Source: Gekko japonicus (lineage: Eukaryota). Taken from it: DNA of 59,297 nucleotides. The stretch is taken from assembly GCF_001447785.1 (NCBI RefSeq), contig NW_015176571.1:50204-109500 (forward strand), given 5' to 3'. The position numbers were made by a program, and so were the translations under genes. The notes under the pieces are model-generated. The model saw only the letters and a list, made by a program, of their open reading frames with translations. It searched no databases and was not told the origin of the DNA. Of the stretch, positions 15,314-52,700 are shown one piece after another; within the stretch, counting starts at the first letter, position 1, and the number at the start of each line of letters is the position of its first letter.

Positions 15314-18300
15314 TGTCAGGACCCACAGTCAAACAATTGAGTACAGACTTCTAGAAAGGTTATACTTTATTGCTAGTACTATGGTTGCAGGAACATATTC
15401 ACTGTTAGGAATAACTACCATCGAGAAAGCAGACATAGATATATAGGGTATTCAAATGTGCCCCACCACCACCTATGGCCAATTGGCCTGACTTCCCGCG
15501 GGCGGGAAGGAGGACCAGATCAGTTAGAGCCGAGGCTGGGAAATGAAACTAGTCACATGGTTAATTGATGGGAAGACACTACACCAGCAGGCTACAAGGT
15601 CAGTGATAACGAGAAGAGCAGAGAAAGGAATGCGGCAGCCACTGGCACACAGGTTATGAAAGCGAACCCAGGCCCATAAACAATATGGCAGCATAGCTGA
15701 CATTATGCCTGCCCAAAGAACCTCTTGGCCCGCCCAGGAGATCTCCCGGTTAGTCCAGGATACCTCCTAGTTTCCCCGGGAACTCCCCTACTCCCCCCCC
15801 CATTCACGGTGCTGGGGTCCAATCATTCCACCAAATAAAACAGTTTGCTGCATTTAACTTTAGAGTCCAGGATCTTGGAGATCTCGAAATGTTCTTCACC
15901 CTCCACCATGATAGGAGGGGGTACACGTTCCATGGGGCACCAGGAGCTTGGGCCTGGGTCCCATTTCAGGAGGCTGAAATGAAACACAGAATGGATATTG
16001 CGCATGTTAGGAAGGTCAAGATCCACGACCACTTCATCAGGTGTTTTACTTTAAACGGGCCAATGAACGTCCAACCCAGTTTGCGGCTGGGTCTCAACAC
16101 CTTAATGTTTTTTGTGGATACATACACAGAATCTCCAGGCTACAGAGCCCATCCCTCCACTCTTCTCTTGTCAGCCTGAGCCTGGTAAGCCTCTTTGGCC
16201 GCTTCCAATGTTTTACATAACAAAGTCCAAGAATTTTGAAGTTGTTGACACCACTGTGCAGCATCCCCCGGGCCCAAGGTAGCTCCCTCGAGAAAGGGCA
16301 ACGGAGGGGTGTCATAGCCATAGAGTGCTTTGAACGGGGACATTCACGTAGAGGAGTGACACATGTTATTATAGCAAAATTCAGCCAGGGGAAGCAAGTC
16401 TACCCATCCTGTTGGTAATTGGTGAAACAATGCAAATATTGTTCTAAAGTTTGATTCACCCGTTCGGTCTGTCCATCAGTTTCTGGATGATAGGCACTAC
16501 TCATGGCCCGTTCCACTCCCATGAGTTTTAACAATTCCCCAAAAAACTTGTCTGGGAGTGTGTGGAGGCGCACCACATGTTGCAAAAAGGCCTTTGCCAG
16601 GGCTTTGGCGGTGGGCAAGGACGCAAACGGGATAAAATGAGCCTGTTTAGAAACAGGTCGACCACCACCCAAATGACAGTCATGGGTTTTACTAGGGGGT
16701 AGATCCGTAATAAAATCCATAGAGATCACCTCCCATGGGTGACTCGGGGTTGGGAGAGGTTTCAGCAACCCTGGAGTTTTACCAGGGCGGGGTTTACACA
16801 TGACACAAGTTTGGCAAGACTGAACAAACGAATATAAATCCTTCCGCATGAGTGGCCACCAAAATTGTCTTTGCAAAAGGTGCCGGGATTTTATGAATGC
16901 ACAGTGGCCAGCAAGCTTAGAGCCATGAACTGCTGCAAGCACCTCCCCCCGAAATGATCTGGGCACAGTTTGGAGCCATGGTACCAACAACCATCCGCTT
17001 TTCTTTTCAACCCCCCGACATTTTCCACCTCTTTGTCGGCATCTGAAAAGGCAGAGGCAAATCTGACACTCCAGGCTACCTCGCCTGGAGGAACAGGAGG
17101 GGAGGAGCCGTGTTCGGATAATTGGTCCAGAGGGGAGAAGACCGCACGGCTGCGAGTCGTCACCACCCCTCCTAGATGTGAGGGTGTGAACATAGAGTCT
17201 AGTACCACCTCCCTTTGGCTGTCATGTTGTGGGAGGCGGGATAGTGCGTCCACCAGCGAATTCGCCGAGCCCGGGAAATGGTGCAACATGAAGTGAAACT
17301 TGAAAAAGAAGTCAGCCCACCGCAACTGTTTGGCATTCAGGTTGGGGGGGGGGGTTGAGCACTTCCAGGTTCTTATGATCTGTACAGACCTCAAACAGCA
17401 CCCGGGCCCCTTCTAACCAATGTCTCCAGGTTGAGAGCGCCAACCGGATCGCTCCCGCTTCTTTGTCCCAAACCAACCAATCGCGCTCGGTTTCGTTAAA
17501 TTTATGGGACACATACGCCAGGGGGTGTAACAACCCATCGTCCCCCTCTTGCAAGATTGCGCCCCCCCCCCAATCGTCACGTCTGAGGCATCAACTTGGA
17601 TGATGAATTTTTTATTTTCGTCTGGGTGGGCCAGCACTGGCTCTGACGTGAATAGAGCCTTCAGCCGGTCGAATGCCTCCTGGCATTCTTCCGTCCATTG
17701 AAGCTTAGCACTCGGTTTGGTCGCGTGTGGCCCTTTCCCTTTGGTTTTCAACAAGTCAGTGAGTGGTAAGCTGACCTGGGCAAAGTTGGGGGAAAAATTT
17801 CGATAGGAATTTGAGAATCTGAGGAAGGACTGGAGCTGGCAGCATGTGCAGGGGGCCTCCCACCTAAGTACATCCCGGACCTTCCGCGGGTCCATTTCCA
17901 GCCCCTTGTTGGAGATCCTATATCCCAAAAAGTCAATGACCGACTTATGAAATTTGCACTTGGAGAGTTTAGCAAAGAGTTTGTGCTTGTGCAACGTCTG
18001 GAGCACTTCCCTCACCAGTTTCACATGTGAGGGGAGGTAGGGGGAATACAGCAAGATATCATCCAAGTAAACAAGGGCCCCCTTGAATAAATGCTTGTGC
18101 AACACCTCATTAATCAAATTCATGAATACTCCCAGAGCCCCCTGGAGGCCAAATGGCATCACTCGGTAATCGAAGTGGCCAAGGGGTATATTAACGGCGG
18201 TCTTGTGCTCATCTCCCTCCCTTATGCGAACTTGGAAGTACGCATCTTGGAGATCCAATTTGGAGAAGATTTTTCCCTTAGACACCTCGGCCAAGCGGCA

Positions 18301-20230
18301 TGGGGTAGGCATTGGTAGACGAAGCAGCATTCAAGCTCCTATAGTCAGTACATAGCCTCAAAAAACCCCGCCCCCTCTTTCTTTTTCTGGAACAGCACGG
18401 GAGCTGCAAATGGTGAGGAAGCCGGCCTGATAAAACCCCGGGCCAGGTTCTTATCAATAAACTTACACAGTTCATCTTTTTCGACCAGTCCCATTGGATA
18501 AATACATCCCTTAGGAAATTTATGACCCAGCAGTAATTCGATACTACAGTCTGAATGCCTATGAGGCAGGAGCTCATCCGCTTCTTCCTCTTCAAAGACC
18601 CTGGCCAAGTCCCGGTATTCGGGGGGAATCAAAACCAACTCTTCTTGGGCCAGGCAAACACGGGGGGGTTCGGCTTCTGGCTGGGAACCCCACTGCGGGT
18701 TCCATAAATGCGACTTGCATCGTGGGGAAATTAATTGCACCTTCCCTTCGTCCCACAGAATGTAGGGATTGTGTCCATGCAGCCAGGGGCTTCCTAATAC
18801 TAGTGGGAATCTGGCTGTGGGGGTAATCATGAATGAGCGTTCTTCCTAGTGATACCCCGCCCCCAACCGCAATGGCACCGTCTCAAACTCGCAAGGTTTC
18901 TTCATCGTGGACCCATCCATTTGAGTAAAAATTAGGGGGTTGGGTAACCGCACCATCGTGGCTTCCAGCCCTGTCACCAAAGATGGATTGATGAGGTCCC
19001 TCCCACACCCCGAGTCAATGATCCCCCTTACTCTGATGTGGGTCCCCTCGGCCAGATTCATGAGAGTCACAGTCACAAAAAAGAGGGAAGGGTAGCTGCT
19101 CACCACTTTTGGCGCCTACGAGATCGGGCCCTGCTGCTCCGCGCCTCACACAGCAGCACCTGGCCTTTTCCCACCGGCTTGCGGCGTCCTCTCCGCTGGG
19201 ATTTGCGTTTTTCTCCTCAATGGCAGCTTGCGGTGCTTGCTGAAACTTTGCCTTATTAGGCCCCTTCTCCACCAAGGTGGGGCCCCGTCGCTTCCTGGCG
19301 TCCGTCCTTACTGTGGCTTTGCAATGCGGGGGGGGTGTCTTTCTCCAGTCGTAGCACTATCGAGCCTGAGGGTGTTCAGTCGACACTCCGCATCCTTGGC
19401 TTCTCGCATCCAAGCCATCAGTGTCACGGGATCCACCGTCCGGAGAACCATCTCCCAGATTTCTGGGTCCAAACCAGTGTGATACTGCTTGACCAGGGCT
19501 TCATCAGACCATCCCTGGGTTTTGGCAGCCTGCAGTCTGAACTCAATGTTGAGTACTCTGGACAGTCTTCATCCCATCGGAACGTGCGTAAGAATGCCCA
19601 GGCTTTGGCACCCACATTGCGATCCTCGAATTGTGCCCGCAAAAAATCGCCCACACCCTGCAGTTCCTGACCATCCCCGTTGTAGATGCTGACATACCAT
19701 GCCGCCGCTCCACTGCGTAACTGGGATACAACATAGTCCACCTGGCCCTCTTCGTTCAGGAACAAGTGGCCCCAGTTTGCCACGAATTTCAGAGTCCTTA
19801 CCACGAACAACGGGAGGGCTTCTGGGTCTCCATCAAAAGTCACATCCAATGGCTCCTTCAGGCAATACAGCTCCCCCCCCCCCCCCCGCACTTCCTTGCA
19901 CTGTGCACAGTGCACCCAACCAGTCACTCTATAAGTGGGCACATTTGGCAGGCTGGCCAACTAGTTTCCAAAGGCACCTTCCCTAGGCTGCCTGCAAGTG
20001 GGAAACCACATGGCTGGGCTTGGGGAGGTGGGGCCAAAGAGATTCTGCCTACTGCATATGAACAGCCAGGAGTCCAACACGCTTTGTTCAGAGGTGGAAG
20101 CACTGGTGGCGGTGCATCCCAGCCCCAAGGGGACTGGCTGCATAGAGCTTGGGGCCAAACCAACCCTCATCCTTTATGGTTGCGAACTCTGGGTTGGGCA
20201 ATCTTGGGGAAGACCCTGAGGAGGGACCAC
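15314..20230 (-). mobile_element. Decayed Ty3/Gypsy chromovirus-type LTR retrotransposon (gag-PR-RT-RH-IN-chromodomain, 3' LTR; 5' LTR not seen)
   Basis: Gag (TFDGDPEALPLFV, 19424-19960), protease IIDSG (18846-19106), RT YLDD (17413-18330), RNase H, integrase (16400-16990), chromodomain HFEISKILDSK (15823-16032). Many frameshifts and stops. LTR TGTCAG...CTGACA at 15314-15702. Right boundary approximate. Confidence 0.93.
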
Positions 20231-22693
20231 AGCAGGGGGTATAATACTATTCTGGTCCACATTCTGACTGGTTTCCCAAATGCTCATGGGCCAGATATGA
20301 GAAGCCCCAGGCCATATGTCCAAGACTACCTCCCACAACTTCCAAAAACTGCCCTGTATGGTGTGGCAAGATGTAACAGCAAGCTATTTAATCTCTGCTC
20401 TGTGTGCTGGATGAACTAATTAAGCCTGCTGTACTTCACAAAACTGGCCAGACACAGCTTAGTCCCAAGGGAACTTAATGGATGTGGATGCTGTTACTAC
20501 TGGTGACAGGGCTGTTTGAATGCTAAGAACTAGTTTTGTGGAAGTTTCTCCCAAGTTTAGCAAGCAAACTGACTTAACTGTATCTATTCTATCGGAATTA
20601 TGGCCATGGCTGACAGTTTAGCATGCACACCTAACAAGCAGTTAAAAGTAATAAAGACAAAATTATGGGGGAAAGGGTTTTTATTGAATTTTGTTTCCAA
20701 TTAAAGTAATGCAGTCAGATACAGAATTTAGAACACATTAAAATAACATTGGGCTACAGTAATTATTTAAGTACCATGGGACAATCTGGGACACAAGACA
20801 CAATACATTTTTGCACAATATCCAATTTTAATCTTATTTGGGGAAATGGTATAAGTTTTTATTGTCGCTACAAGATTTTGAATGTATTCACTGGTAGATA
20901 GCCAAGTACCTCTGGCACTATGTTCTTCAGTATGTTTTCCTTGTCCAACTTCTAACAATTATTTCTAGTATCGCAACTAGATGTTTACTATGAAAGACAT
21001 TCTGATTTTGGTAGGTATCACCAAATCCAGTGATCCATACAAAAACTGAGATTTCATTAAAAACCCAAACATTATATGTGTTGGTTGACAGCAAATTTCA
21101 GAAATAATACCAGTAGAAGACATTTTCTAAAGCTCTGATGTGAAGCAGCTCTTTGAACTGGTGGTCTTCTAATTTGCCAAAAATTTGAAGTGCCATGTAA
21201 AGATGTAGTTCCAGGCTAAATGATGTCTCTTACTCTCTAAAGCAGGAATCTCAAATAGGATTCAATGTCACAGATGGGGTAGTGGCAGGTCTACGTGTTA
21301 CATGAGAATTACATTTAGAACATCCAATATTGTAGTGATGGCTTGTATTGGCTAGTCACTTAATACATTCAAAATGATGCAACACTGGTTGCAATCCAGC
21401 AGTTGTATGCTTCAGTCCCATTGAAATCAGAGGGCTGCAGAATGCTTAACTGAAGTAGGATTGCATCCTAAGCACACTTCACTTGTCCTGTTAAATTAAC
21501 AGGAATTACTTCAAATGTTCCTAGGATCATAGCCTAAGGATGCAATACAGCTTCATTAAAATATGCTAATACAATTAATGAAAACAACTGCACACTCAGC
21601 TTTTAAGTTTGTTTCATCTTCTGACTTCAGAGCTTCTCTTTGCACCATGTTCACTTTAAATCTCAACTCAGAAAGGCAAACATGGATCACACCCTCACTG
21701 TTACTCAAGTGCAAAGGCACACACATGTGCTTTTCAGTTTTTTTAAACTTTTTTTTTTTAAAAAAAATCATGCCATGAGCTCAGCATGGTCTTTTTTACA
21801 TTCAGTTTTGTACTAAAAATACTTTTATTCTGGCAGGAAAGCCCAGCATATATTTACATATGCTACAAAGTTTTACAGTTATTTACATGGCTCTTTTTTC
21901 CATATGTAAAAGATGTTTTTATACTCGCGAACCTCAAACAAGTTCATCTCAAACTGGCCTCAACAGTTCTATTTCAGTAAGAGATACAAAAACACACAAA
22001 ATGTATTTCAAATATAGCTCAGTGAAATACACTGTGAAGGAGAACACTTTAAAGCGCTTGGCAGTCATCTGGCAATGCAAAAATGCTTTTGAGTTGGCAC
22101 ACTTATAGGCTGGTTGTGTTCCCCTAGGCTTGCACAAAAAGCTAGAGATCAAACGCAGAACCATGTTTCAGTTCTTACTAAACAAGTGCTGCACAAAATT
22201 TTGTTCCCAAATTCGTTTGGTCATAGGACTTTGCCTTCCCAAATCACCTTTTCAGATGACGGATCAGCCATATAATTGTTGAAACTGAAAAATATGTTAC
22301 TTGCTTTTTAAAAACAATTTTAGGTGATTTTTAAAAAAAATAGAGTTCTGTCAAAAAGTTACTTTTCTTCGACACCTACAATATTTGATCAAATGCAGGC
22401 AAATTATTTTTGCAATTATTTTGTAATGGAAATTTGGTCAATTTTTACTTCCCCTGAAAAGGGAATAGTGCCTAATGAGAACACGAAAGTGAGATGGTCT
22501 AAAAAAGCAAGCACTGCCTATCAGTTTTAACAGCACAGAGCCCCAGAAGAGTGACATGTTAAAGTATTCTTTACACCGCCCAGTAAAAAAATTCTCACAG
22601 TTAATTTGAATTCCTTACAATGTGCTTGGGATTGCATTTTGAAACCCCAACACTGCAGACTTTGAAACTATAAAATGTGTGATGTTTTCCACT

Positions 22694-23107
22694 TCAAGCC
22701 TGAACTTTAAGCAAGGTCTTCAACTGGAAAGTCATGATATCTTTATCAGCAGGGTTCAGTGAAACAGTGACCCAATGACTCGGTGGTTTAGGAAGATCAC
22801 TTGGGGAAGGAGGCTCACTGAATTTTGCTCCAGCATAATTTTGATTGGTTTGAGGCATGAAGAGTGCCGTGGATAAAGATGGATTCCAATTCTGGCTAGT
22901 CGGGAAATGCACTGTGGTCTTTCCTCCAGTCTGCATGGCCTGCCACGCTGCAGATGGTGGACTACATCCATGTCCCCTTTCTTTCTTGTGGATTTTCTTC
23001 ATCTGGGAATTCTGATCTTTGTTCTTTTTCCTGTTTAGCTGCTGTTGGTTCTTGTTAGCGTTTCTGGGCTGGGTAGATGGAATGTTAAACCTTTCTCCAC
23101 CCCCCAT
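22694..23107 (-). CDS. PNRC2: PNRC2, proline-rich nuclear receptor coactivator 2 (137 aa)
   Basis: MGGGERFNIP start (ATG 23107). PNRC motif YAGAKFSEPPSPSDLPKPPSHWV and C-terminal LKTLLKVQA. Exon acceptor TTCTTTTCCCCTAAATAG| with exon start at 23125. Adjacent to SRSF10 tail-to-tail as in mammals. Confidence 0.97.
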   Translation of the reverse strand: MGGGERFNIPSTQPRNANKNQQQLNRKKNKDQNSQMKKIHKKERGHGCSPPSAAWQAMQTGGKTTVHFPTSQNWNPSLSTALFMPQTNQNYAGAKFSEPPSPSDLPKPPSHWVTVSLNPADKDIMTFQLKTLLKVQA

Positions 23108-23896
23108 TTTCAACTTAAGTGTCACCTATTTAGGGGAAAAGAACAAGTGCAACTGTCAATAGAAAACAGAAGTATTTTTTGGAAGCTACAATGTACACCA
23201 CACATTTTTTTCTGCAAAAAGAATACCAAACTTTGGTATAGCTAAGGGCTGAGTTATATGTTATAAGGGTTTCCCAGACAACTTGATGTTGAAAAGCATT
23301 TTGGGAGGACGGGATCAGTGCCATGGTAAGGGAAGATCCTGATAGAAATTGTCTCCAAGTTGCTATTAACTCCAGGCAGGGAAAAATACAAATATCTCCA
23401 ACTTTAGCAAACCAATCTGGCTACCAAAGAAAACCCACCAGAACTTTGTTCCCAAATACAATGTTTTCTTGTATATACATCAGTCCACTTCTTAAATCCT
23501 AAAACATTCTGTCATTTGAAACATTTAAAACAAAACCGAAACAGATTCATAGTACAGATAGGTACACATGATTTGGCTATTAACATACTGAAAACTTAAT
23601 ATGCGATACTGAACGTTCTCGCAAGCACATTCTACAAGCAACGCCCCAACCAAATAATTTAATAGGCAGATAAAACACCTAAAAATATTGAGTTATTAAA
23701 CATAGATACTTCAACACTAGCTTAACTTTCATGGTTTCTCACAAGAATACTTTGTAAGGATATAGTACATTTTAAATGTGTGTTCCAATCCCTAACCAAG
23801 AATGCAAGAAACCATGACAAATGGTCTTAAAGGTCAGCTCTGAACTGAGATTTTAGAGCACTCTTCAGGTTGTATTATAGTTATTGTTCCCTTTAC

Positions 23897-23958
23897 CTTT
23901 CAGTTTTCTTTTCAGAGTCCACAGTCTCCACCTCCTGCCCTCTTTCTTGCTGCCAGAC
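23897..23958 (-). other. PNRC2: PNRC2 non-coding 5' UTR exon (62 nt)
   Basis: On the - strand CTATTCTTTCAG|GTCTGGCAGC...CTGAAAG|GTAAAG, with a purine-rich body. Confidence 0.75.
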
Positions 23959-24509
23959 CTGAAAGAATAGATGCTGACTCCTGTTGGACCCCTTCCTTTG
24001 CTTAGGAATGGTAGTTCTCATGGGCCGATCTGCTGTTTTCAGCCACGAAGCTGAGCCCAACATCGGATTCTCGACACACGGGCTTCAATGGTATAAGTCC
24101 CAGCTCTAAAAAGACAAAGTCTGAATAAATGCCAAATAAAATTCCTTGCCTGAAAATAACACTGGGAAAGACCACTCTGGAATTTATATAAGAAGAGCCC
24201 TCCTACTTGACCAGTCCTAGGTCCAGCCACATAGTTACCAATCAGATTCTCCTGGAAGGCCTTCAAGCATGGGAGGGAAGTCAAAACCTCAATAGGCTCT
24301 TCTGCAGGGATGTATTAGAAGGAAGGACAGGTGCCCATTGGAAATAATGGGAGACGCTTGAAGGCCCATTGGAAATAATGGGAGCAAGGAATGCCAATTG
24401 ACTGGCATGGGCTCCATTGAAATACATTAGAGTACAAGTAGATTAGAGTTGCAATAAAAATGCAGAATGGATTTTCTATTAGGGTCGCTGGGCCCAAACA
24501 CACTACTCT

Positions 24510-25892
24510 GGGACTGGGATGATGGGCCACGGAGTAGAATGACAGCCCCAAGGTGTAGCAGGAGTGTTCTGTGACTGAAATGAGAGACCATGGAGTGGAA
24601 TGACAGCCCCAGGGTGTAGCGGGAGTGTTCTGTGACTGGAATGAGAGACCACAGAGTGAAATGACAGCCCCAGGGTGTAGCAGGAGTATTCTGGGACTGG
24701 GATGAGACCACAGAGTGGAATGACAGCCCCTAGAGGTAGCAGGAGTGTTCAGGGACTGGAATGAGGGACCACAGAGTGAAATAACAGCCCCAGGGTGTAG
24801 CAGAAGTATTCAGGGACTGGAATGAGAGACCACGGAGTGGAAGGACAACCCCTGGAGGTAGCAGGAGTGTTCTGGAACTGGAATGACAGGCTCCAGAGGG
24901 TTATGATGGCCTCTGGGTGTAGCAGGAGTGTTCAACTGGAATGAGAGACCACAGCGTGGAATGACAGCCCTTAGGAGTAGCAGGAGTGTTGAGGGAATGA
25001 GAGACCACGGAGTCTAATGATAGCCTCTGGGGGTAGCAGGACTGTTCTGGAATTGTGATGAAAGACTACAGAGTGGAATGACGGCCCCAGCATTTAGCAG
25101 GAGTTTTCAGGGACTGGAATGACAGGCCTCAGAGTGGAATGACAGCCAAAGGGTGTAGCAGGAGTGTTCAGGGACTGGAATGAGAAACCACAGAGTGGAA
25201 TGACAGCCTCTGGGGGTAGCAGGAGTGTTCTAGAAATGGAATCAGAGTCCCCAGAATGGAATGACAGACCCTGGAGGTAGCAGGAGTGTTCAGGGACTGG
25301 AATGAGGGTCCACGGAGTGGAATGACAGCCTCTGGGGGTAGCAGGAGTGTTCTAGAAATGGAATCAGAGTCCCCAGAATGGAATGACAGACCCTGGAGGT
25401 AGCAGGAGTGTTCAGGGACTGGAATGAGGGTCCACGGAGTGGAATGACAGCCTCTGGGGGTAGCAGGAGTGTTCTAGAAATGGAATCAGAGTCCCCAGAA
25501 TGGAATGACAGACCCTGGAGGTAGCAGGAGTGTTCAGGGACTGGAATGAGGGTCCACGGAGTGGAATGACAGCCTCTGGGGGTAGCGTTCAACTGGAATG
25601 AGAGACCACAGCGTGGAATGACAGCCCTTAGGAGTAGCAGGAGTGTTGAGGGAATGAGAGACCACGGAGTCTAATGATAGCCTCTGGGGGTAGCAGGACT
25701 GTTCTGGAATTGTGATGAAAGACTACAGAGTGGAATGACGGCCCCAGCATTTAGCAGGAGTTTTCAGGGACTGGAATGACAGGCCTCAGAGTGGAATGAC
25801 AGCCAAAGGGTGGAGCAGGAGTGTTCAGGGACCGGGATGAGAGGCCCCAGAGTGGAATGACAGCTCCAGGGTGTTGCAGGAGTGTTCAGGGA
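24510..25892 (+). repeat. Left-arm ~61-bp tandem array
   Basis: Unit approximately GAGTGGAATGACAGCCCCAGGGTGTAGCAGGAGTGTTCTGGGACTGGAATGAGAGACCACA. Period 61 (24601 to 24662). Confidence 0.95.
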
Positions 25893-26144
25893 ATCAGGCA
25901 GAGTGTGACATGGAAAGGGAACATGGAGATAAGGAAGGCAGCACAACTGGACATTGGAACTGGTAGAAGACAAGGGCAAGATTTATAATTGACAATGGAG
26001 GAAGCTCACATCAACCTCATGAATTTGTAAGGAAACAAAAGAGCTGAGATAGAGCTGATGTGATGATAGCTACACACATTCCAGAAATATTTAAATGAAA
26101 AGTATTTCACGCTAAAGTTTGCAAATCCAGTTGCACAGAACTAC

Positions 26145-27210
26145 CTCTACCCCCAGGGTCTCTCCTTCCACTTTGGGGCCTGTCATTCCAGGCCCATAAG
26201 AGTCCTGCTACTTCTAGGGACTGTCAATCCACCTTGGAGCCTGTCATTTCATTCCCAGGATACTCCCAGGGGCTGTCATTCCACTTAGTGGTCTCCCATT
26301 CCAGTTCCAAAACACTCCTGCCATATCTAGGGGCTGTCATTCGACTCTGGGGCTTGTAATTCCGGTCCCAGAATATTCCCACTACTTGAAGGGACTATCA
26401 TTCCACTTAGTGGTCTCCCATTCCAGTTCCAGAACACTCCTAGCCCTCCCTGGGGCAGTCATTCCACTCTGGGGCCTGTCATTCTAGTCACAGAACACTG
26501 CTGCTCCCCCCCGAGGGCTGTTATTCCACTCCGTGGTCTCCCATACCATTCCGTGAACACTCCCAGGGGTTGTCATTCCATTCTGTGGTCTCACATTCCA
26601 GTTCCAGACCACTCCTACGGCATCCAGGAGCTGTCAGTCCACTCTAGGGCCTGTCATTCCAGTCCCAGAACACATCTGCTACACCCAGGGGATGTCATTC
26701 CACTCTGTGGTCTCTTATTCCAGTCACAGAACACTCCTGCTACACGCTGAGGCTGTCATTCCACACTGTGGACTCTCATTCCAGTCCGAGAACACTCCTG
26801 CTACACCCTGGGGCTGTCATTCCACTCCGTGGCCTGTCATCCCAGTTCCAGAACACTCCTGCTACACCTTGGGGCTGGCCATTCCATTCCGTGGCTTGTC
26901 ATCCCAGTCCCGGAAAACCCCTGCTCCACCCTAGGGCTCTCATTCCACTCTGTGGTCTCTCATTCCAGACCCAGAACACTCTATACCCAGGGGCTGTCAT
27001 TCCACTCCGTGGCTTGACATCCCAGTCCCAGAACACTCCTGCTACACCCTGGGGCTGTCATTCCACTCCACGGCCTGTCATCCCAGTCCCAGAACCTTCC
27101 TGCTCCACCCTGGGGCTGTCATTCCACTCCGTGGTCTCTCATTCCAGTCCCTGAACACTCCTGCTACACCCTGGGGCTGTCATTCCACTCTGGTCTCTTA
27201 TTCCATCCCC
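26145..27210 (-). repeat. Right-arm ~61-bp tandem array (reverse complement of the left arm)
   Basis: Repeats of GGGGCTGTCATTCCACTC...CCAGAACACTCCTGCTACACCC. Confidence 0.95.
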
Positions 27211-28443
27211 AGAGTAGTGTATTTGGGCCCAGAGACCCTAAAAGAAAATCCATTCCGTGTTTTTATTGCAACTCTACTTGTACTCTAATGTATTTCAATG
27301 GAGCCCATGCAAGTCAATTGGCATTCCTGGCTATTATTAGTTCCAATCGGCCTTCAAGCGTCTCCCATTATTTCCTATGGGCAATCCTGTCCTTCCTTTT
27401 AGTACATCCCTCTTCTGCATTCTCATTTTTGTCACTCGCTTGTCCCTATTGCTTTGGGTCCCTCCCCCCTTTCCCACATGTGTTTTGCTCCCTCTGGGAC
27501 TACTAGAGAGAGCAAAACACATTAAAGAGAAAGCCCTGAAACAATAGGAACACACAAGTGATGAAAATCAGAATGCGGAAGAGCCGAATGTTGATGAGTC
27601 CCAGTTACTAGCCTCTCAACATGAAGATGTGCTTTGTCCATCTTCACTTTATTAGATGCATTCAAATTTAAACAAGTTCACTGTAAATTATGATTTCTTC
27701 TCTCTTCCAGTGTGAATTTTCAATTCCAGGGCAGCAATAATGGTTTCCCAGAATCTACAGTACTTAAAGACAAAAGCTGATTGTAGCATAAGCTTCTGTC
27801 AGTTGGAACACATTACCCTCCAAAGATTAAGTATTTTGTGTATTCGTGGTTTTTTTAAAGGAAAATACCAGCACAATGGAATGATCAGTTACAGGTCTGT
27901 CCATATAAAATAGCTTGCTCAGAATACATCAAACCTTCATTGTTTGTAGTTTGCACACTTAAACATATTGCTGAAACTTCATTAAATAAAATACTTTTAA
28001 ATGAAGTCCAGCAGCCAATAAGTCCATTTTTAACATTCATATCAACTGAGTAGCCTGTTAGACTTGAACTGTTGATTCAACCACAGAAAATGCAAGTCAT
28101 TAACTCCCCAAAGACTAACAAATATTGGAAACCCTCCCAAAGTACTTCAGATACAACAAGAAAGTTCTCCCCTATTGTTTTAGGTTTCTTTTATTGAACA
28201 TAAATGTTTCTTTTAAGAGTATCAAGAGCAGGTATTACCAATACACAAGGTTCTCACTATACGTAGCATTTCATACTCATATTTGCAACACAGTACATGG
28301 CAGTATCCTACTTCCAAAAAATCAGGCCCTACCTCCAAGCACAGACAAGTCCAACCTTGTCCAGTAAGGCAAAACGTGGCCATTGATTTCAATGCAATGT
28401 GCTAGTCTGGCTCTGCATAGGATCATTCTGATTACCATAATAT

Positions 28444-28502
28444 GTCCATGGGGTTGCAAAGAGTCGGACTCGACTGTGCGACTGAACAACAACAACAACA
28501 AC
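28444..28502 (+). mobile_element. BovB/RTE-type 3' terminus
   Basis: GTCCATGGGGTTGCAAAGAGTCGGAC...GACTGAAC(AAC)n. A second, longer fragment lies at about 40130-40276. Confidence 0.7.
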
Positions 28503-30779: not shown

Positions 30780-32540
30780 AAGAGAATTACAGGCCAGTCA
30801 GTCTGACGTCCGGGTAAATTGGTGGAAACCATTATTAAGGAAAGAATTAGTAGGCACATAGATGAACAAAACCTATTGAGGCAGACTCACCATGGGTTCT
30901 GTAAGGGAAGATCTTGTCTCACTAACCTGTTAGTGTTCTTTGAGGGGGTGAACAAACACATGGACAAGGGGGATCCAATAGATATTGTTTACCTTGACTT
31001 CCAGAAAGCTTTTGATAAAGTTCCTCATCAAAGGCTCCTAAGTAAGCTCAAAAATCATGGGATAAAAGGACAAGTCCTTTTATGGATCAAAAACTGGCTA
31101 ATTAATAGAAAACAGAGAGTGAGTATTAATGGGCAATTTTCTCAGTGGAGGGTGGTAAGCTGTGGGGTACCGCAGGGATCAGTACTTGGTCCACTGCTTT
31201 TTAACTTGTTCATTAATGATTTGGAGATGGGAGTAAGCAGTGAAGTGGCTAAATTTGCGGATGATACGAAGTTGTTCAGGGTGGTGAAAACCAGTGAGGA
31301 TTGTGAGGCACTCCAAAGGGATCTGTCAAGGATGGGCAAGTAAACAGTGAAGTGGCAACATGGCAAATGTGTTCAATGTGGCCAAGTGCAAGGTGATGCA
31401 AATTGGAGCCAAAAATTCTAAATATAAATACACATTGATGGGGTCTGAACTGGCAGAGATTGATCAAGAGAGCGATCTTGGAGTTGTAGTAGATAACTCA
31501 CTGAAAATGTCGAGACAGTGTGTGACTGCAATAAAGAAGGCCAATGCTATGCTGGGGATTATTAGGAAGGGTATTGAAAACAGATCAGCCAATATAATAA
31601 TGCCCCTATATAAATCAATGGTGAGACCTCATTTGGAATACTGTGTGCAGTTCTGGTCACCACACCTTAAAAAGGATATTATAGCTTTGGAAAAAGTGCA
31701 GAAAAGGGCAACTCGAATGATAAAAGGGTTGGAACACTTTCCCTATGAGGAAAGGTTAAAGCGCTTAGGGCTCTTTAGCTTGGAGAAAAGACGACTGAGG
31801 GGTGACATGATCGAGGTTTATAAGATTATGCATGGGAAAGAGCAGGTAGAGAAAGAGGTACTTTTCTCCCTTTCTCACAATACAAGAACTCGTGGGCACT
31901 CCATGAAACTGCAGAGCGGTCGGGTTAGAACGGATAAAAGGAAGTACCTGGATGGGCCTTTGGCCTGATCCAACATTGGCGTCTCTTATGTTCTTATGTT
32001 TTTATGAGTAATTACAACATGGAATTTACTGCCAGAGGATGTAGTGATGGTCACAGGCTAGGTTTGCCAGGTCTGGGTTGGAAAATACCTGGAGTCTTTG
32101 GGGGTGGAGCCAGGAGAGGGCGGGGTTTGGGGAGGGGAGGGGCCTCAGCAGTGTACAATGCCATAGAGTCCACCCTTCAAAGCAGCCATTTTCTCCAAGG
32201 GAGCTGATCTCTGTCAGCTGGAGATCAGTTGTAAAAGTGGGAGATCCCCAGGCCCCACCTGGAGGCTGGCAACCCTGTCACAGGCATAAACAGCTTTAAA
32301 AGTGGATTAGACAGATTCACAGAAGATAGGTCTATCAATGACTACTAGCCACGGTGATTAAAAGGAACCTCCACATTCAGAGGCAGTAAGGCTCTGAATC
32401 CAAGTGCCAGGAGGCAACATCAGGGGAATCCCTTGACCTATACACCCTGTTCTTGGACCTCCAGAGGAACTGGTTGGTCGCTGTGTGAGATAGGATGCTG
32501 GTCTGATCCATTAGGACTCTTTCTATGTTCGTATGTTCTT
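30780..32540 (+). mobile_element. 5'-truncated CR1 LINE (RT domain and 3' tail) with nested insertions
   Basis: NYRPVSLTS, YLDFQKAFD, GVPQGSVLGP and KFADD motifs. Frameshift near 31343. (TTCTATG)-like tails at about 31990 and 32530. Confidence 0.93.
32059..32277. mobile_element. hAT-type MITE nested in CR1
   Basis: TIRs TAGGTTTGCCAG / CTGGCAACCCTG. 8-bp TSD TCACAGGC at 32051-32058 and 32278-32285. Related copies at about 28923-29115, 33170-33378, 35156-35350 and 43100-43297. Confidence 0.9.
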
Positions 32541-49757: not shown

Positions 49758-52700
49758 TTTTTTTTTAAATATATTTATTTCAGTTTTAAAATGCATTACA
49801 TCATGCATATAAATTTTGCGCATAGATATAACCATTACAGAGTTCCACAACATCTCGTTTAACTTATTACATCTTCTTAAACCATTTATAAAACTTTTCC
49901 CACCTATTAGCAAATATTGTTGTATCTTTGTATTGTAGTAATGTGGTTAACTTGTCCATTTCAATCACTTCCTGTATTTTAAAGATTAAATCTTTTTTAA
50001 ACGGTATCCCCCCTTGTTTCCAATTCTTGGCAAACAAAATACGTGCTGCAGTGACAATATATCCTAGAACATATTTTTCTTCCTTCCTATATTTTTCTGG
50101 CATTACATTTAACAGAAAAAATTCTGGTGTATATGGTATCTCAATTTTTAATATATCAGCTAACATTTTGTGTACTTTATGCCAGTATCTTTGGGACTCA
50201 GCGCACCTCCACCACATATGGTAGAAGGTGCCTACATTGTTTTTACACTTCCAACAATTTTTTGACAAAGTTGTATAGCATTTTGCTAGTTTGTCTGGTG
50301 ACCAATGCCAGCGGTGGCACATTTTAAATAGATTTTCCTTATAGGGAATAGANNNNNNNNNNNNNNNNNNNNNNNNNNNNNNNNNNNNNNNNNNNNNNNN
50401 NNNNNNNNNNNNNNNNNNNNNNNNNNNNNNNNNNNNNNNNNNNNNNNNNNNNNNNNNNNNNNNNNNNNNNNNNNNNNNNNNNNNNNNNNNNNNNNNNNNN
50501 NNNNNNNNNNNNNNNNNNNNNNNNNNNNNNNNNNNNNNNNNNNNNNNNNNNNNNNNNNNNNNNNNNNNNNNNNNNNNNNNNNNNNNNNNNNNNNNNNNNN
50601 NNNNNNNNNNNNNNNNNNNNNNNNNNNNNNNNNNNNNNNNNNNNNNNNNNNNNNNNNNNNNNNNNNNNNNNNNNNNNNNNNNNNNNNNNNNNNNNNNNNN
50701 NNNNNNNNNNNNNNNNNNNNNNNNNNNNNNNNNNNNNNNNNNNNNNNNNNNNNNNNNNNNNNNNNNNNNNNNNNNNNNNNNNNNNNNNNNNNNNNNNNNN
50801 NNNNNNNNNNNNNNNNNNNNNNNNNNNNNNNNNNNNNNNNNNNNNNNNNNNNNNNNNNNNNNNNNNNNNNNNNNNNNNNNNNNNNNNNNNNNNNNNNNNN
50901 NNNNNNNNNNNNNNNNNNNNNNNNNNNNNNNNNNNNNNNNNNNNNNNNNNNNNNNNNNNNNNNNNNNNNNNNNNNNNNNNNNNNNNNNNNNNNNNNNNNN
51001 NNNNNNNNNNNNNNNNNNNNNNNNNNNNNNNNNNNNNNNNNNNNNNNNNNNNNNNNNNNNNNNNNNNNNNNNNNNNNNNNNNNNNNNNNNNNNNNNNNNN
51101 NNNNNNNNNNNNNNNNNNNNNNNNNNNNNNNNNNNNNNNNNNNNNNNNNNNNNNNNNNNNNNNNNNNNNNNNNNNNNNNNNNNNNNNNNNNNNNNNNNNN
51201 NNNNNNNNNNNNNNNNNNNNNNNNNNNNNNNNNNNNNNNNNNNNNNNNNTGGAACACTTTGTGTTCATTCACCATTCACTATTACTTTTGCAAATTGTTC
51301 TGAATAGATCGCTCGAACCATGGTGTAAAAGGTTTCTCCACAGTCCCAACTTGCTAGTTTTTGTAGTATGAAGTTCCAATTAACTCTATCAAATGCCTTT
51401 TCGGCGTCTAAAAAGATTAGCGCCAGTTGTTTCCCAGGCTGTTGTTCGTAATATTCCAACACATTCATAATCACCCTTATATTGCTTTTCATTTGTCTTT
51501 TTGGGAGAAATCCTGCTTGGTCTTGGTGGATTATTTCTATTAATACCTTTTTCAATCTGGATGTGACTATTGCTGCGTAGATTTTATAATCGGCATTAAG
51601 TAATGAGATTGGTCTGTAGTTTTGGATTTCTTTTGCGTCAGAGTTTGGTTTATGTATTAGAGTAATCGATGCTTCCTTCCAAGATTGGGGCATTACTCCC
51701 CCTTGTATAATCTCATATATAACATCTTTAAGTGGGAGCAATAGTTGTTCTTCAAATTTATGGTATACTTCTATTGGTATACTATCAGGTCCTGGGGCTT
51801 TGTTTTTCTTCTGATTTCTAATTGCTTCAATTACTTCCGCGACTGATATTGGGCTATTTAATATTCGTTTTTGATTTTCATAAAATTTCTTGTTATGTAG
51901 TCTTTAGTTTTCTGTGGATTAAGAGGTTCTTGGTGATATAAGTTCCCATAGTATTTTTCAACTATTTCTTTGAGTTCACTATTGAGATTTTTCTCCGTTT
52001 GTTTATCATCTCTAAGTATTTTGATCAATTTTTTCACCTGTTCCTTTTTTAGTTTATATGCCAGCCATCTTGAGGGTTTGTTGGCATATTCGAAGAAATA
52101 TTGTTTTGTATATTCCAGTTTTCTGGCTATTTCCTGTGTTAAGATCAGATTTAATTTATGTTGCTGCAGATTCAGTTTGGATTTGAGATGTTCATTATAT
52201 CTGCCTTCTTTCATTTTGTCTTCTTCTTCCTTTATTGAATTTACTAATTTTGTATACTCATTTTTACGCTGTTTTTTCTCCCATGCGTCTTCAGTTATAA
52301 ATAAACCCCTCAAATAGGCTTTAAAAGTATCCCAGGTTGTTAGAATTGACGTCTCTGGTTGGATGTTATTTTCAAAAAACTCTTTAAGGTGGTTTTTAGT
52401 TTTTTCAACAAAGTTTTCTTTGTTCATTAGTCTTTTGTTCAGATGCCATCTTAATTTTTTATACGTTCCTAGTACAGACATCTTAACTGGATTATGATCT
52501 GCAAATGTAGATGGTAGTATTTCTATATCTTGTACTTCGTTGATTAAAGAAATTGATACCCAAATCATGTCGATTCTTGACCATGATTTATGTCTATTTG
52601 AAAAGAATGTAAAGTCCTTCTTATGTAGATTTTTCACTCTCCAGATATCTGCAAGGTTTTGTTCTTCAGCTAATTCTAGAAAGGACTTGGGAAGTATGTT

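What the first reader, a model, noticed from the sequence alone, without database searches (positions are those of the whole stretch)
24298..27419. 3.1-kb foldback transposon with a 9-bp TSD (Mutator-like), an unusual element type for an amniote
Seen: what looks like two minisatellites is one insertion. The layout is TSD TCTTCTGCA, ~210-bp terminus starting GGGATG, ~1.4 kb of 61-bp repeats, ~250-bp spacer, ~1.05 kb of the same repeats inverted, inverted terminus ending CATCCC, identical TSD. Known: long modular TIRs with internal tandem repeats, G-starting ends and 9-bp TSDs characterise Foldback/Mutator (MULE) elements, whereas hAT gives 8 bp and Tc1 gives TA. MULEs are considered scarce in amniotes. 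Inference: a non-autonomous member of a possibly undescribed squamate family that tandem-repeat masking would hide. The perfect TSD suggests it is not very old, and an autonomous partner may exist.
Basis: partly seen in the sequence, partly recalled or inferred. Interest (0 to 1): 0.8.

Follow-up and report, generated by a model that had tools for sequence, protein, structure and literature searches.

The report
Gecko foldback transposon beside PNRC2 promoter
A 3.1-kb non-coding "foldback" jumping gene, one of several hundred copies in this gecko genome, landed about 150 bases upstream of the PNRC2 gene after this species split from two relatives. Which enzyme family moves it (Mutator-like is plausible but unproven) could not be settled.

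Summary
The element spans 24307-27410. It has ~205-nt terminal inverted domains (89-90% identical), head-to-head 61-bp arrays (23 and 18 units) and a 255-bp spacer. It is flanked by TCTTCTGCA on both sides.

It is a real transposon insertion:
- It splits the left arm of an older palindromic MITE, and removing it with one repeat copy restores that arm.
- Raw reads of the same species pile up a few hundred- to over a thousand-fold on the termini and about 80-fold on the spacer.
- Contigs of two relatives (~5-6% diverged) match the left flank and stop at or just before the predicted insertion point while running on, which suggests an empty site.

The Mutator label is not shown:
- The direct repeat is really 10 bp. 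One copy allows a 9-bp duplication (ends GGGATG, favoured) or 7 bp (ends AGGGATG).
- Merlin elements (8-9 bp, GG ends, tandem repeats) fit equally well.
- No transposase gene lies in the element or the window, and no other copy could be fetched.

New here: the insertion lies ~116 bp upstream of the TATA box of PNRC2. The left array has very recent private duplications.

First readers of this scan noted other foldback elements elsewhere in this genome, one with 61-bp arrays.

The parts
24298..24306 (.). Left copy of the target-site duplication, TCTTCTGCA. The direct repeat extends one base further, to C at 24297.
   Evidence: Read directly from the sequence.
24307..24506 (+). Left terminal domain (non-repetitive, ~200 nt), starting GGGATG. 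This is the outer part of the terminal inverted repeat (TIR).
   Evidence: Aligns to the reverse complement of 27206-27410 at 89-90% identity. Read depth is about 320 against about 0.8 in the flanks.
24333..24384 (+). Two exact direct copies of a 21-nt motif, GCCCATTGGAAATAATGGGAG, at 24333-24353 and 24364-24384. Each contains a small CCCATT/AATGGG palindrome. A degenerate third copy lies near 24411-24431. These are candidate transposase-binding sites (inferred).
   Evidence: K-mer analysis. The same positions in the right terminus carry one good copy and one decayed copy.
24507..25892 (+). Left array of 23 units of 61 bp. Each unit is built of three ~20-nt sub-repeats, two of them starting TGGAATGA.
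   Evidence: TRF period 61 and period 20. Unit table.
24930..25842 (+). Recent duplications private to this copy, inside the left array. Segment 24930-25185 is repeated at +657 (253 of 256 identical). A run of exact 122-bp periodicity covers about 394 bp from 25193.
   Evidence: Units L8-L11 = L19-L22 and L13/L14 x3 at 98-100%. Read depth falls to about 8 at 25555-25751.
25893..26147 (.). Central spacer, 255 bp, AT-rich (40% GC), with no coding capacity. It belongs to the family.
   Evidence: Depth about 63 against 0.8 in flanks. Contigs of another run span both spacer/arm borders (records 5 and 7). Only short ORFs.
26148..27205 (-). Right array of 18 units of the same 61-bp repeat, in inverted orientation.
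27206..27410 (-). Right terminal domain, ending CATCCC.
   Evidence: The bin covering it and the array edge (27131-27327) has depth about 1150.
27411..27419 (.). Right copy of the target-site duplication, TCTTCTGCA.
24295..24306 (+). First 12 nt of the host element, an older ~178-bp palindromic MITE (small non-coding transposon) that was split by the insertion.
   Evidence: Joining 24295-24306 to 27420-27585 gives a near-palindrome. Its restored left arm pairs with the right arm ending at 27585.
27420..27585 (+). Remainder of the host MITE. The MITE is itself multi-copy.
   Evidence: In one search, contigs of other copies diverge exactly before 27410 and after 27585, and there are many opposite-strand joints at 27454/27523.
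24183..24190 (-). Context: TATA box (TATATAAA on the minus strand) of the PNRC2 promoter, 116 bp from the insertion point. A CCAAT box in reverse (ATTGG) lies at 24238-24242.
   Evidence: Read from the sequence. The position fits the 5' end of the spliced contig.
23895..24146 (-). Context: non-coding first exon of PNRC2.
   Evidence: An X11 contig of depth 1124 joins 23123 to 23895. The skipped ends CT..AC correspond to GT..AG on the minus strand, and the intron has depth about 27.
22694..23123 (-). Context: coding exon of PNRC2 (143-aa ORF 22694-23125, of which 23124-23125 lie beyond the splice junction).
   Evidence: Pfam PNRC motif, E 3e-6, 27.4 bits against a cutoff of 21.

Best explanation
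The feature is one insertion of a non-autonomous, non-coding, foldback-type cut-and-paste DNA transposon. It belongs to a family with several hundred copies in this gecko genome.

Each end of the element has a ~200-nt specific terminal domain. This domain carries repeated 21-nt motifs, which are the likely transposase-binding sites. Inside each terminal domain lies an array of 61-bp repeats. The two arrays face each other across a 255-bp spacer.

A transposase encoded elsewhere cut the target with a stagger of most probably 9 nt, and repair of that stagger gave the duplication TCTTCTGCA. The target was the left arm of an older MITE, about 155 bp upstream of the PNRC2 transcription start. The event happened after this species diverged from two relatives.

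Since then the arrays have kept changing by unequal exchange or replication slippage.

The superfamily is not shown. My odds within this explanation are: Mutator sensu lato (FB/MULE/Rehavkus-like) about 0.4, Merlin about 0.2, P-like about 0.1, hAT about 0.05, and another or unknown superfamily for the rest.
For: Shown:
- The TIR of 204-206 nt at ~89-90% identity ends exactly at GGGATG/CATCCC, next to an exact 9-bp (10-bp) direct repeat.
- Removing 24307-27419 restores the arm of a palindromic MITE. This serves as an internal empty-site control.
- Raw reads of the same species at ~0.8x flank depth give ~320x and ~1150x in the bins over the left and right ends, and ~63x on the spacer.
- Contigs with head-to-head joins of the arrays occur in three species (table 5). 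Contigs of another run span the arm/spacer borders (records 5 and 7).
- A contig of relative B matches the left flank up to 24306 exactly and then runs on for 21 unlike letters. This is what a de Bruijn contig entering an uninterrupted MITE by about 31 letters would do. A contig of relative C stops at 24300 and runs on for 98 unlike letters (records 12 and 17).
- The left junction is present in an independent run of the same species (record 3).
- There is no ORF with a family match, and only short frames inside the element.
- Identical 122-bp and 657-bp-offset duplications occur in the left arm.

Inferred: the role of the 21-nt motifs, and the 9-nt stagger.
Against: - Only one copy could be read, so the exact ends and the TSD length are not fixed.
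- Neither the autonomous partner nor any transposase was found.
- The empty site in the relatives is inferred from where contig alignments stop. The joined form itself was not among the rows shown.
- The depths come from reads accepted at 85% likeness, so they give only a rough copy number.
- The two terminal domains differ by ~10%. The element is therefore not a very fresh copy of a perfectly symmetric master.
Confidence: 0.85

Rival explanations
1. The element is a Merlin-superfamily non-autonomous element. It would be moved by an IS1595-like DDE transposase, which makes 8-9-bp duplications.
For: Merlin elements have TIRs of 24-462 bp with a conserved terminal 5'-GG and 8- or 9-bp TSDs. Several families carry internal tandem repeats and imperfect TIRs (PMC8101967). 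Merlin transposases are recorded in chordates, whereas no MULE transposase has been verified in a vertebrate (PMC6446971). This element starts GG, has a 9-bp TSD and a ~205-nt terminal domain.
Against: No squamate name occurs in the supplementary files of the Merlin survey. Foldback architecture with kilobase arms is not reported as typical of Merlin. No transposase was seen.
Confidence: 0.2
2. The element is a Galileo-like foldback element of the P superfamily with a 7-bp duplication. The ends would be AGGGATG...CATCCCT and the TSD CTTCTGC.
For: The TIR can be extended by one complementary pair (A at 24306, T at 27411). That gives a perfect TIR with a 7-bp TSD and the same reconstructed target. 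Galileo has long foldback-like TIRs with repeated THAP-binding sites (PMC3688188, listed), and by my recollection of the Drosophila literature makes 7-bp duplications. An unchecked first-reader note reports a 61-bp-array foldback with a 7-bp TSD elsewhere in this genome (s1-816650).
Against: This reading needs three chance base identities to explain the 10-bp direct repeat, against two for the 9-bp reading, a likelihood ratio of about 4:1 for 9 bp (my calculation). P-type ends usually begin CA.
Confidence: 0.1
3. The element is a hAT element (8-bp TSD CTCTTCTG, left end CAGGGATG) whose right end lacks its last three bases.
For: The left junction reads CAGGGATGT. This matches the hAT terminal pattern YARNG and the first nine bases of an Anolis hAT TIR listed as CAGGSRTGT... 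(PMC3014272). hAT is the dominant DNA transposon superfamily in lizards.
Against: The right end reads CATCCCTC, not CATCCCTG. An 8-bp TSD works only with a 3-nt asymmetric end. The CA is already explained as the last two bases of the TSD, which the MITE reconstruction shows to be target sequence.
Confidence: 0.05
4. The feature is not a mobile element. It would be a local inverted duplication of a minisatellite, or an assembly artefact.
For: Inverted tandem arrays are hard to assemble. No single contig or long read spanning the whole element was shown.
Against: Against this stand the exact flanking duplication at the exact ends of the TIR, the restored MITE, and termini and spacer present at a few hundred-fold and ~80-fold depth. 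The same head-to-head arrangement also occurs in contigs of three species, and the left junction is confirmed in an independent run.
Confidence: 0.03

Closest known systems
Tetris (Drosophila virilis foldback transposon) and Drosophila FB elements
   Same: The modular TIR has the same plan: an outer specific domain, then internal tandem repeats, then a middle non-coding domain. TSDs are 8-10 bp, no ORF is present, the autonomous partner is unknown, and the arrays are prone to expansion (PMC4079207). FB4 has 9-10-bp TSDs and ~700-bp TIRs (PMC8277862).
   Different: There is no sequence relationship. The repeat unit is 61 bp, built from three ~20-nt sub-repeats, against 220 bp in Tetris. The host is an amniote. 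Even for Tetris and FB, the Mutator assignment rests on TSD length, not on a transposase.
Mutator-like elements (MULEs), including Rehavkus
   Same: Both have a 9-bp TSD, long TIRs (Rehavkus 26-400 bp) and a minisatellite next to a TIR in Rehavkus (PMC6446971). The promoter-proximal insertion fits the known preference of Mu elements for 5' ends of genes (established knowledge, not tested here).
   Different: No MURA-type DDE transposase was found. Rehavkus is known only from arthropods and annelids, and has one minisatellite before the 3' TIR, not two mirrored arrays. Verified MULE transposases are lacking in vertebrates.
Merlin superfamily
   Same: Both have a terminal GG, an 8-9-bp TSD, TIRs up to 462 bp, and internal tandem repeats in several families. 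Merlin is present in chordates (PMC8101967).
   Different: Kilobase foldback arms are not described for Merlin. No IS1595-type transposase was found, and no squamate is listed in that survey.
Galileo (P superfamily)
   Same: Both have long foldback-like TIRs with tandem repeats that hold multiple transposase-binding sites (PMC3688188).
   Different: By my recollection Galileo has a 7-bp TSD and CA-type ends. Here 9 bp and GGG ends are the more economical reading.

Membership tests
Foldback-type elements (a structural class, not a superfamily) | Long inverted arms built largely of tandem repeats, with little or no unique coding middle | tested here: met
   Arms of 1.59 and 1.26 kb hold 23 and 18 units of 61 bp around a 255-bp spacer. 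There is no ORF with a family match.
Foldback-type elements (a structural class, not a superfamily) | Mobility: flanking target duplication, multiple dispersed copies, empty sites | tested here: met
   A 9/10-bp direct repeat flanks the element. The host MITE is restored when the element is removed. Read depth is a few hundred- to over a thousand-fold, and the flank contigs of two relatives stop at or just before the insertion point.
Mutator / MULE superfamily | MURA-type DDE transposase (MULE domain) in autonomous members that share the termini | not testable with these tools
   The host genome could not be searched. There is no transposase in the element or in the 59-kb window; the ten longest ORFs tested are retroelement genes or unmatched.
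Mutator / MULE superfamily | TSD of 9-11 bp | tested here: inconclusive
   Nine bp is the most economical parse. The same junctions also allow 7 bp (ends AGGGATG), 8 bp with an asymmetric end, or 10 bp. Only one copy was available.
Mutator / MULE superfamily | Long TIRs (about 100 bp or more) | tested here: met
   A terminal domain of 204-206 nt at ~89-90% identity, plus the inverted arrays.
Merlin superfamily | Terminal 5'-GG, 8-9-bp TSD, TIR 24-462 bp (PMC8101967) | tested here: met
   The ends are GGGATG/CATCCC, the TSD is 9 bp under the favoured parse, and the terminal domain is ~205 nt. These features are shared with MULEs, so they do not discriminate.
Merlin superfamily | DDE_Tnp_IS1595 transposase in autonomous members | not testable with these tools
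   No access to the host genome, and none in the window.
P superfamily (Galileo-like) | 7-8-bp TSD and CA-starting TIRs, with a THAP-domain transposase | tested here: inconclusive
   A 7-bp parse exists, but with ends AGGGATG, not CA. The transposase is not testable.
hAT superfamily | 8-bp TSD with symmetric YARNG ends | tested here: not met
   The left end can be read CAGGG, but the right end reads GAGGG in reverse complement. No 8-bp duplication flanks symmetric ends.
Chapaev3 (the Chapaev group known in Anolis) | 3-bp TWA TSD and CAC termini (PMC3014272) | tested here: not met
   The ends are GGG/CCC and the duplication is 9-10 bp.

The most novel reading that the evidence does not exclude
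The family is mobilised by a genuine Mutator-superfamily (FB/MULE/Rehavkus-like) transposase that was active in the Gekko lineage after species divergence, and it prefers promoter-proximal targets as Mu does in plants. This would be the first verified MULE lineage in a vertebrate. It would answer the open question posed by Dupeyron et al. 2019 (PMC6446971) of whether MULEs are really absent from vertebrates.
Probability: 0.3. Interest if true: 0.75.

Novelty: new member of a known kind. Interest (0 to 1): 0.5.

Why it matters
DNA transposons that moved recently are rare in amniotes. Elements with 9-bp duplications point to superfamilies (Mutator, Merlin) that are respectively unverified and little documented there. 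A gecko family with hundreds of copies, lineage-specific insertions and clear termini gives a direct handle for finding the autonomous partner, and so for testing whether vertebrates host Mutator-type transposases.

Tandem-repeat masking hides such elements, so gecko repeat annotations probably undercount them.

This copy sits ~155 bp upstream of the start of a strongly expressed housekeeping-type gene (PNRC2). That makes it a natural case for asking whether a 3-kb hairpin-prone insertion alters promoter function or stability.

Tried and rejected
**Searches for other copies**
1. None found in the window with blastn at word size 7 or with pattern searches allowing 3 mismatches.
3. I tried to reach other copies through spurious ORFs.
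   - The 78-aa ORF of the left terminus found nothing.
   - The 128-aa ORF of the right array found one Logan protein, P0001 (38% identity, E 2e-4). It shows the same periodic peptide, so a diverged related array exists in some other run.

**Other tests that led nowhere**
4. The idea that the 61-bp unit derives from the terminal motif is rejected. The best local alignment score was 15, against 15.5 +/- 2.2 for shuffles.
5. The idea that the arms are a recent mirror duplication is rejected. Units between arms are no more alike than units within arms.
6. Chapaev, the 10-bp-TSD superfamily by my recollection, is rejected. The Anolis Chapaev3 elements have TWA TSDs and CAC ends.
7. Rfam found no family at gathering score in 24000-27800.
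8. No similarity of the 61-bp unit to other repeats of the window, such as SINEs.
9. Pfam on ten of the window's long ORFs (chosen from the 41 of 110 aa or more) found only retroelement genes and no DNA transposase.

**Limits of the evidence**
- Literature searches found no description of foldback, MULE or Merlin elements in geckos. This is not evidence of absence from Dfam or Repbase.
Full report
**1. What is there**

The region reads as one element. Its parts, from left to right:
- An exact direct repeat, TCTTCTGCA, at 24298-24306 and 27411-27419.
- A left terminal domain at 24307-24506, starting GGGATG.
- An array of 23 units of 61 bp at 24507-25892.
- A 255-bp AT-rich spacer at 25893-26147.
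- An array of 18 units of the same repeat in inverted orientation at 26148-27205.
- A right terminal domain at 27206-27410, ending CATCCC.

The two terminal domains align in inverse orientation over 204-206 nt at about 89-90% identity (alignment A1; blastn E 7e-74). The similarity stops exactly at the GGGATG ends, and the flanks beyond do not align.

Each 61-bp unit is made of three ~20-nt sub-repeats, two of which begin TGGAATGA.

The left terminal domain carries two exact direct copies of a 21-nt motif, each with a small internal palindrome, plus a degenerate third copy. The right domain has the same motifs in the same places, partly decayed.

**2. It is an insertion**

Joining 24295-24306 to 27420-27585 gives a ~178-bp near-palindrome, a small MITE. 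Its restored left arm pairs base for base with the right arm that ends at 27585. The foldback element therefore interrupts the left arm of an older MITE, and the target held the duplicated bases only once. This acts as a built-in empty-site control.

The MITE is itself a dispersed repeat. Contigs of other copies diverge from the window exactly before 27410 and after 27585 (table 7).

**3. It is a multi-copy family, and the layout is not an artefact**

Reads were laid on 22600-28500 (5,901 letters).

| Region (raw reads, same species, run X16) | Depth |
|---|---|
| Unique flanks | ~0.8 |
| Left terminal bin | ~320 |
| Right terminal bin | ~1150 |
| Arrays | 100-500 |
| Spacer | ~63 |

At 85% likeness, the termini therefore occur a few hundred to over a thousand times and the spacer about 80 times. 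These are rough figures.

- Contigs of another run of the same species span the left junction (record 3, 24079-24344) and the left arm/spacer border (record 5). A contig of a paralogous copy (87% identical) spans the spacer/right arm border (record 7).
- Contigs that join array units on opposite strands occur in all three species examined (table 5). Head-to-head arrays are thus a property of the family.
- No single record spanning the whole element was shown, so direct long-read proof for this locus is still missing.

**4. Age**

Two related species (coded B and C) differ from the window by about 4-8% in the flanks. They carry the family at very high word depth.
- A contig of B matches 23879-24306 and then runs on for 21 letters that do not match the element. 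A de Bruijn contig entering an uninterrupted multi-copy MITE by about 31 letters (12 + 21 = 33) would end just there.
- A contig of C matches 22600-24300 and runs on for 98 unlike letters (records 12 and 17).

Both results argue that the orthologous sites are empty, so the insertion post-dates the split. The joined form itself was not among the printed rows, so this is strong for B, moderate for C, and not final.

In the spacer, at least seven positions differ from what nearly all family reads show (table 3). This copy is therefore at least ~3% from its family majority.

The arrays are old and heterogeneous: mean unit identity is 72-77% within arms and 74% between arms. The left arm, however, holds two very recent private events. 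A 256-bp segment is repeated at an offset of 657 bp (253 of 256 identical), and about 394 bp show exact 122-bp periodicity. The arrays keep changing by unequal exchange or slippage.

**5. TSD length**

The direct repeat is 10 bp (C at 24297 and 27410). The TIR can be extended by one pair (A at 24306, T at 27411).

Three parses give the same reconstructed target:
- 9 bp with ends GGGATG/CATCCC.
- 7 bp with ends AGGGATG/CATCCCT.
- 10 bp with a right end one base short.

Counting the chance identities each needs, 9 bp is about four times more likely than 7 bp, but one copy cannot decide.

A hAT reading (CAGGG end, 8 bp) needs a right end lacking three bases and is unlikely. Chapaev3 as known in Anolis (TWA, CAC ends) is excluded.

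**6. Superfamily**

Nothing in the element codes for protein. Ten of the window's long ORFs were tested and gave only retroelement genes or no match.

The features that are visible are a 9-bp TSD, GG ends, long TIRs and tandem repeats. Several groups share them:
- Mutator sensu lato: FB, Tetris, and Rehavkus (9 bp, TIR 26-400 bp, minisatellite; PMC6446971).
- Merlin: 8-9 bp, terminal GG, TIR up to 462 bp, internal tandem repeats, present in chordates (PMC8101967).

Dupeyron et al. could not verify any MULE transposase in a vertebrate and list this as an open question. The Merlin survey lists no squamate.

Foldback architecture is known to arise in different superfamilies, for example Galileo in the P superfamily (discussion in PMC4079207). 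I therefore file the element as a foldback-type non-autonomous TIR transposon of unresolved superfamily. My odds are Mutator-like about 0.4, Merlin about 0.2, P-like about 0.1 and hAT about 0.05.

**7. How it most likely works**

Shown:
- The cut-and-paste style insertion with a staggered target cut.
- Family amplification.
- Array instability after insertion.

Inferred:
- A transposase encoded by an autonomous relative binds the 21-nt subterminal motifs in the ~200-nt terminal domains and cleaves at the GGG/CCC ends.
- The 61-bp arrays are passengers, or extra binding platforms, that grow by unequal exchange.
- The long imperfect inverted arms can form hairpins or cruciforms.

**8. Genomic context (new)**

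The ORF at 22694-23125 on the minus strand carries the PNRC motif.

One run (X11, type not on record) behaves like RNA. A contig of depth 1124 joins 23123 to 23895 with GT..AG ends on the minus strand, while the skipped 771 nt have depth ~27. This defines a non-coding first exon of PNRC2 at about 23895-24146.

On the minus strand, a TATA box lies at 24190-24183 and a reverse CCAAT box at 24242-24238.

The insertion point (24306/24307) is thus about 116 bp upstream of the TATA box and about 155 bp upstream of the transcript start. PNRC2 is still strongly represented in that run. Several unchecked first-reader notes on this genome also place foldback elements next to promoters. This is only a lead for a target preference.

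**9. Earlier notes of this scan**

First readers noted foldback elements on other pieces of this genome: 23 notes hold the word "foldback", though not all concern this kind of element. One describes head-to-head 61-bp arrays with a 7-bp TSD, and several describe 9-bp TSDs. None has been checked for family.

A follow-up on another long-TIR element likewise could not test its family. Follow-up notes name the genome as Gekko. I did not verify the species.

**10. Limits**

- There was no access to the host genome, Dfam or Repbase.
- Read laying and the look-up of sequencing runs allow one call each, and both were used.

Noticed in passing
window 24295-24306 + 27420-27585: An older ~178-bp palindromic MITE (arms ~71% complementary, central 18-nt hairpin at 27478-27522) hosts the foldback insertion. 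It is multi-copy in three species, with many variants joined at 27454/27523 on opposite strands. No clear TSD of its own was seen.
   Followed up: partly
window 22694-24190, minus strand: A PNRC2 gene lies here: the coding exon (143-aa ORF with a PNRC motif), a 771-nt GT-AG intron (23124-23894), a non-coding first exon (~23895-24146), and TATA and reverse CCAAT boxes just upstream. The foldback element lies ~155 bp upstream of its start.
   Followed up: partly
run X11 on window 22600-28500: A run of unrecorded type behaves like RNA-seq (spliced PNRC2 contig at depth 1124). It also holds contigs across the left junction of the element and much family sequence, so family copies may be transcribed. 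Strand and level cannot be read from contigs.
   Followed up: no
window 28313-28500: A very abundant repeat, about 7,400-fold read depth against 0.8 in the flanks, with a sharp 5' border at 28444 and an A-rich tail near 28495. This is probably a SINE.
   Followed up: no
window 16400-18830 (-), 30819-31968 (+), 50286-54387 (-): Retroelement remnants: LTR-type pol (RVT_1, RNase H, integrase zinc domain), a LINE reverse transcriptase, and a LINE with an endonuclease domain and long open frames.
   Followed up: partly
protein P0001 (Logan contig, 1132 bp, source not retrievable): A 157-aa predicted peptide is 38% identical over 99% of the array ORF and has the same periodicity. A diverged relative of the 61-bp array therefore exists in another public run of unknown organism.
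   Followed up: partly
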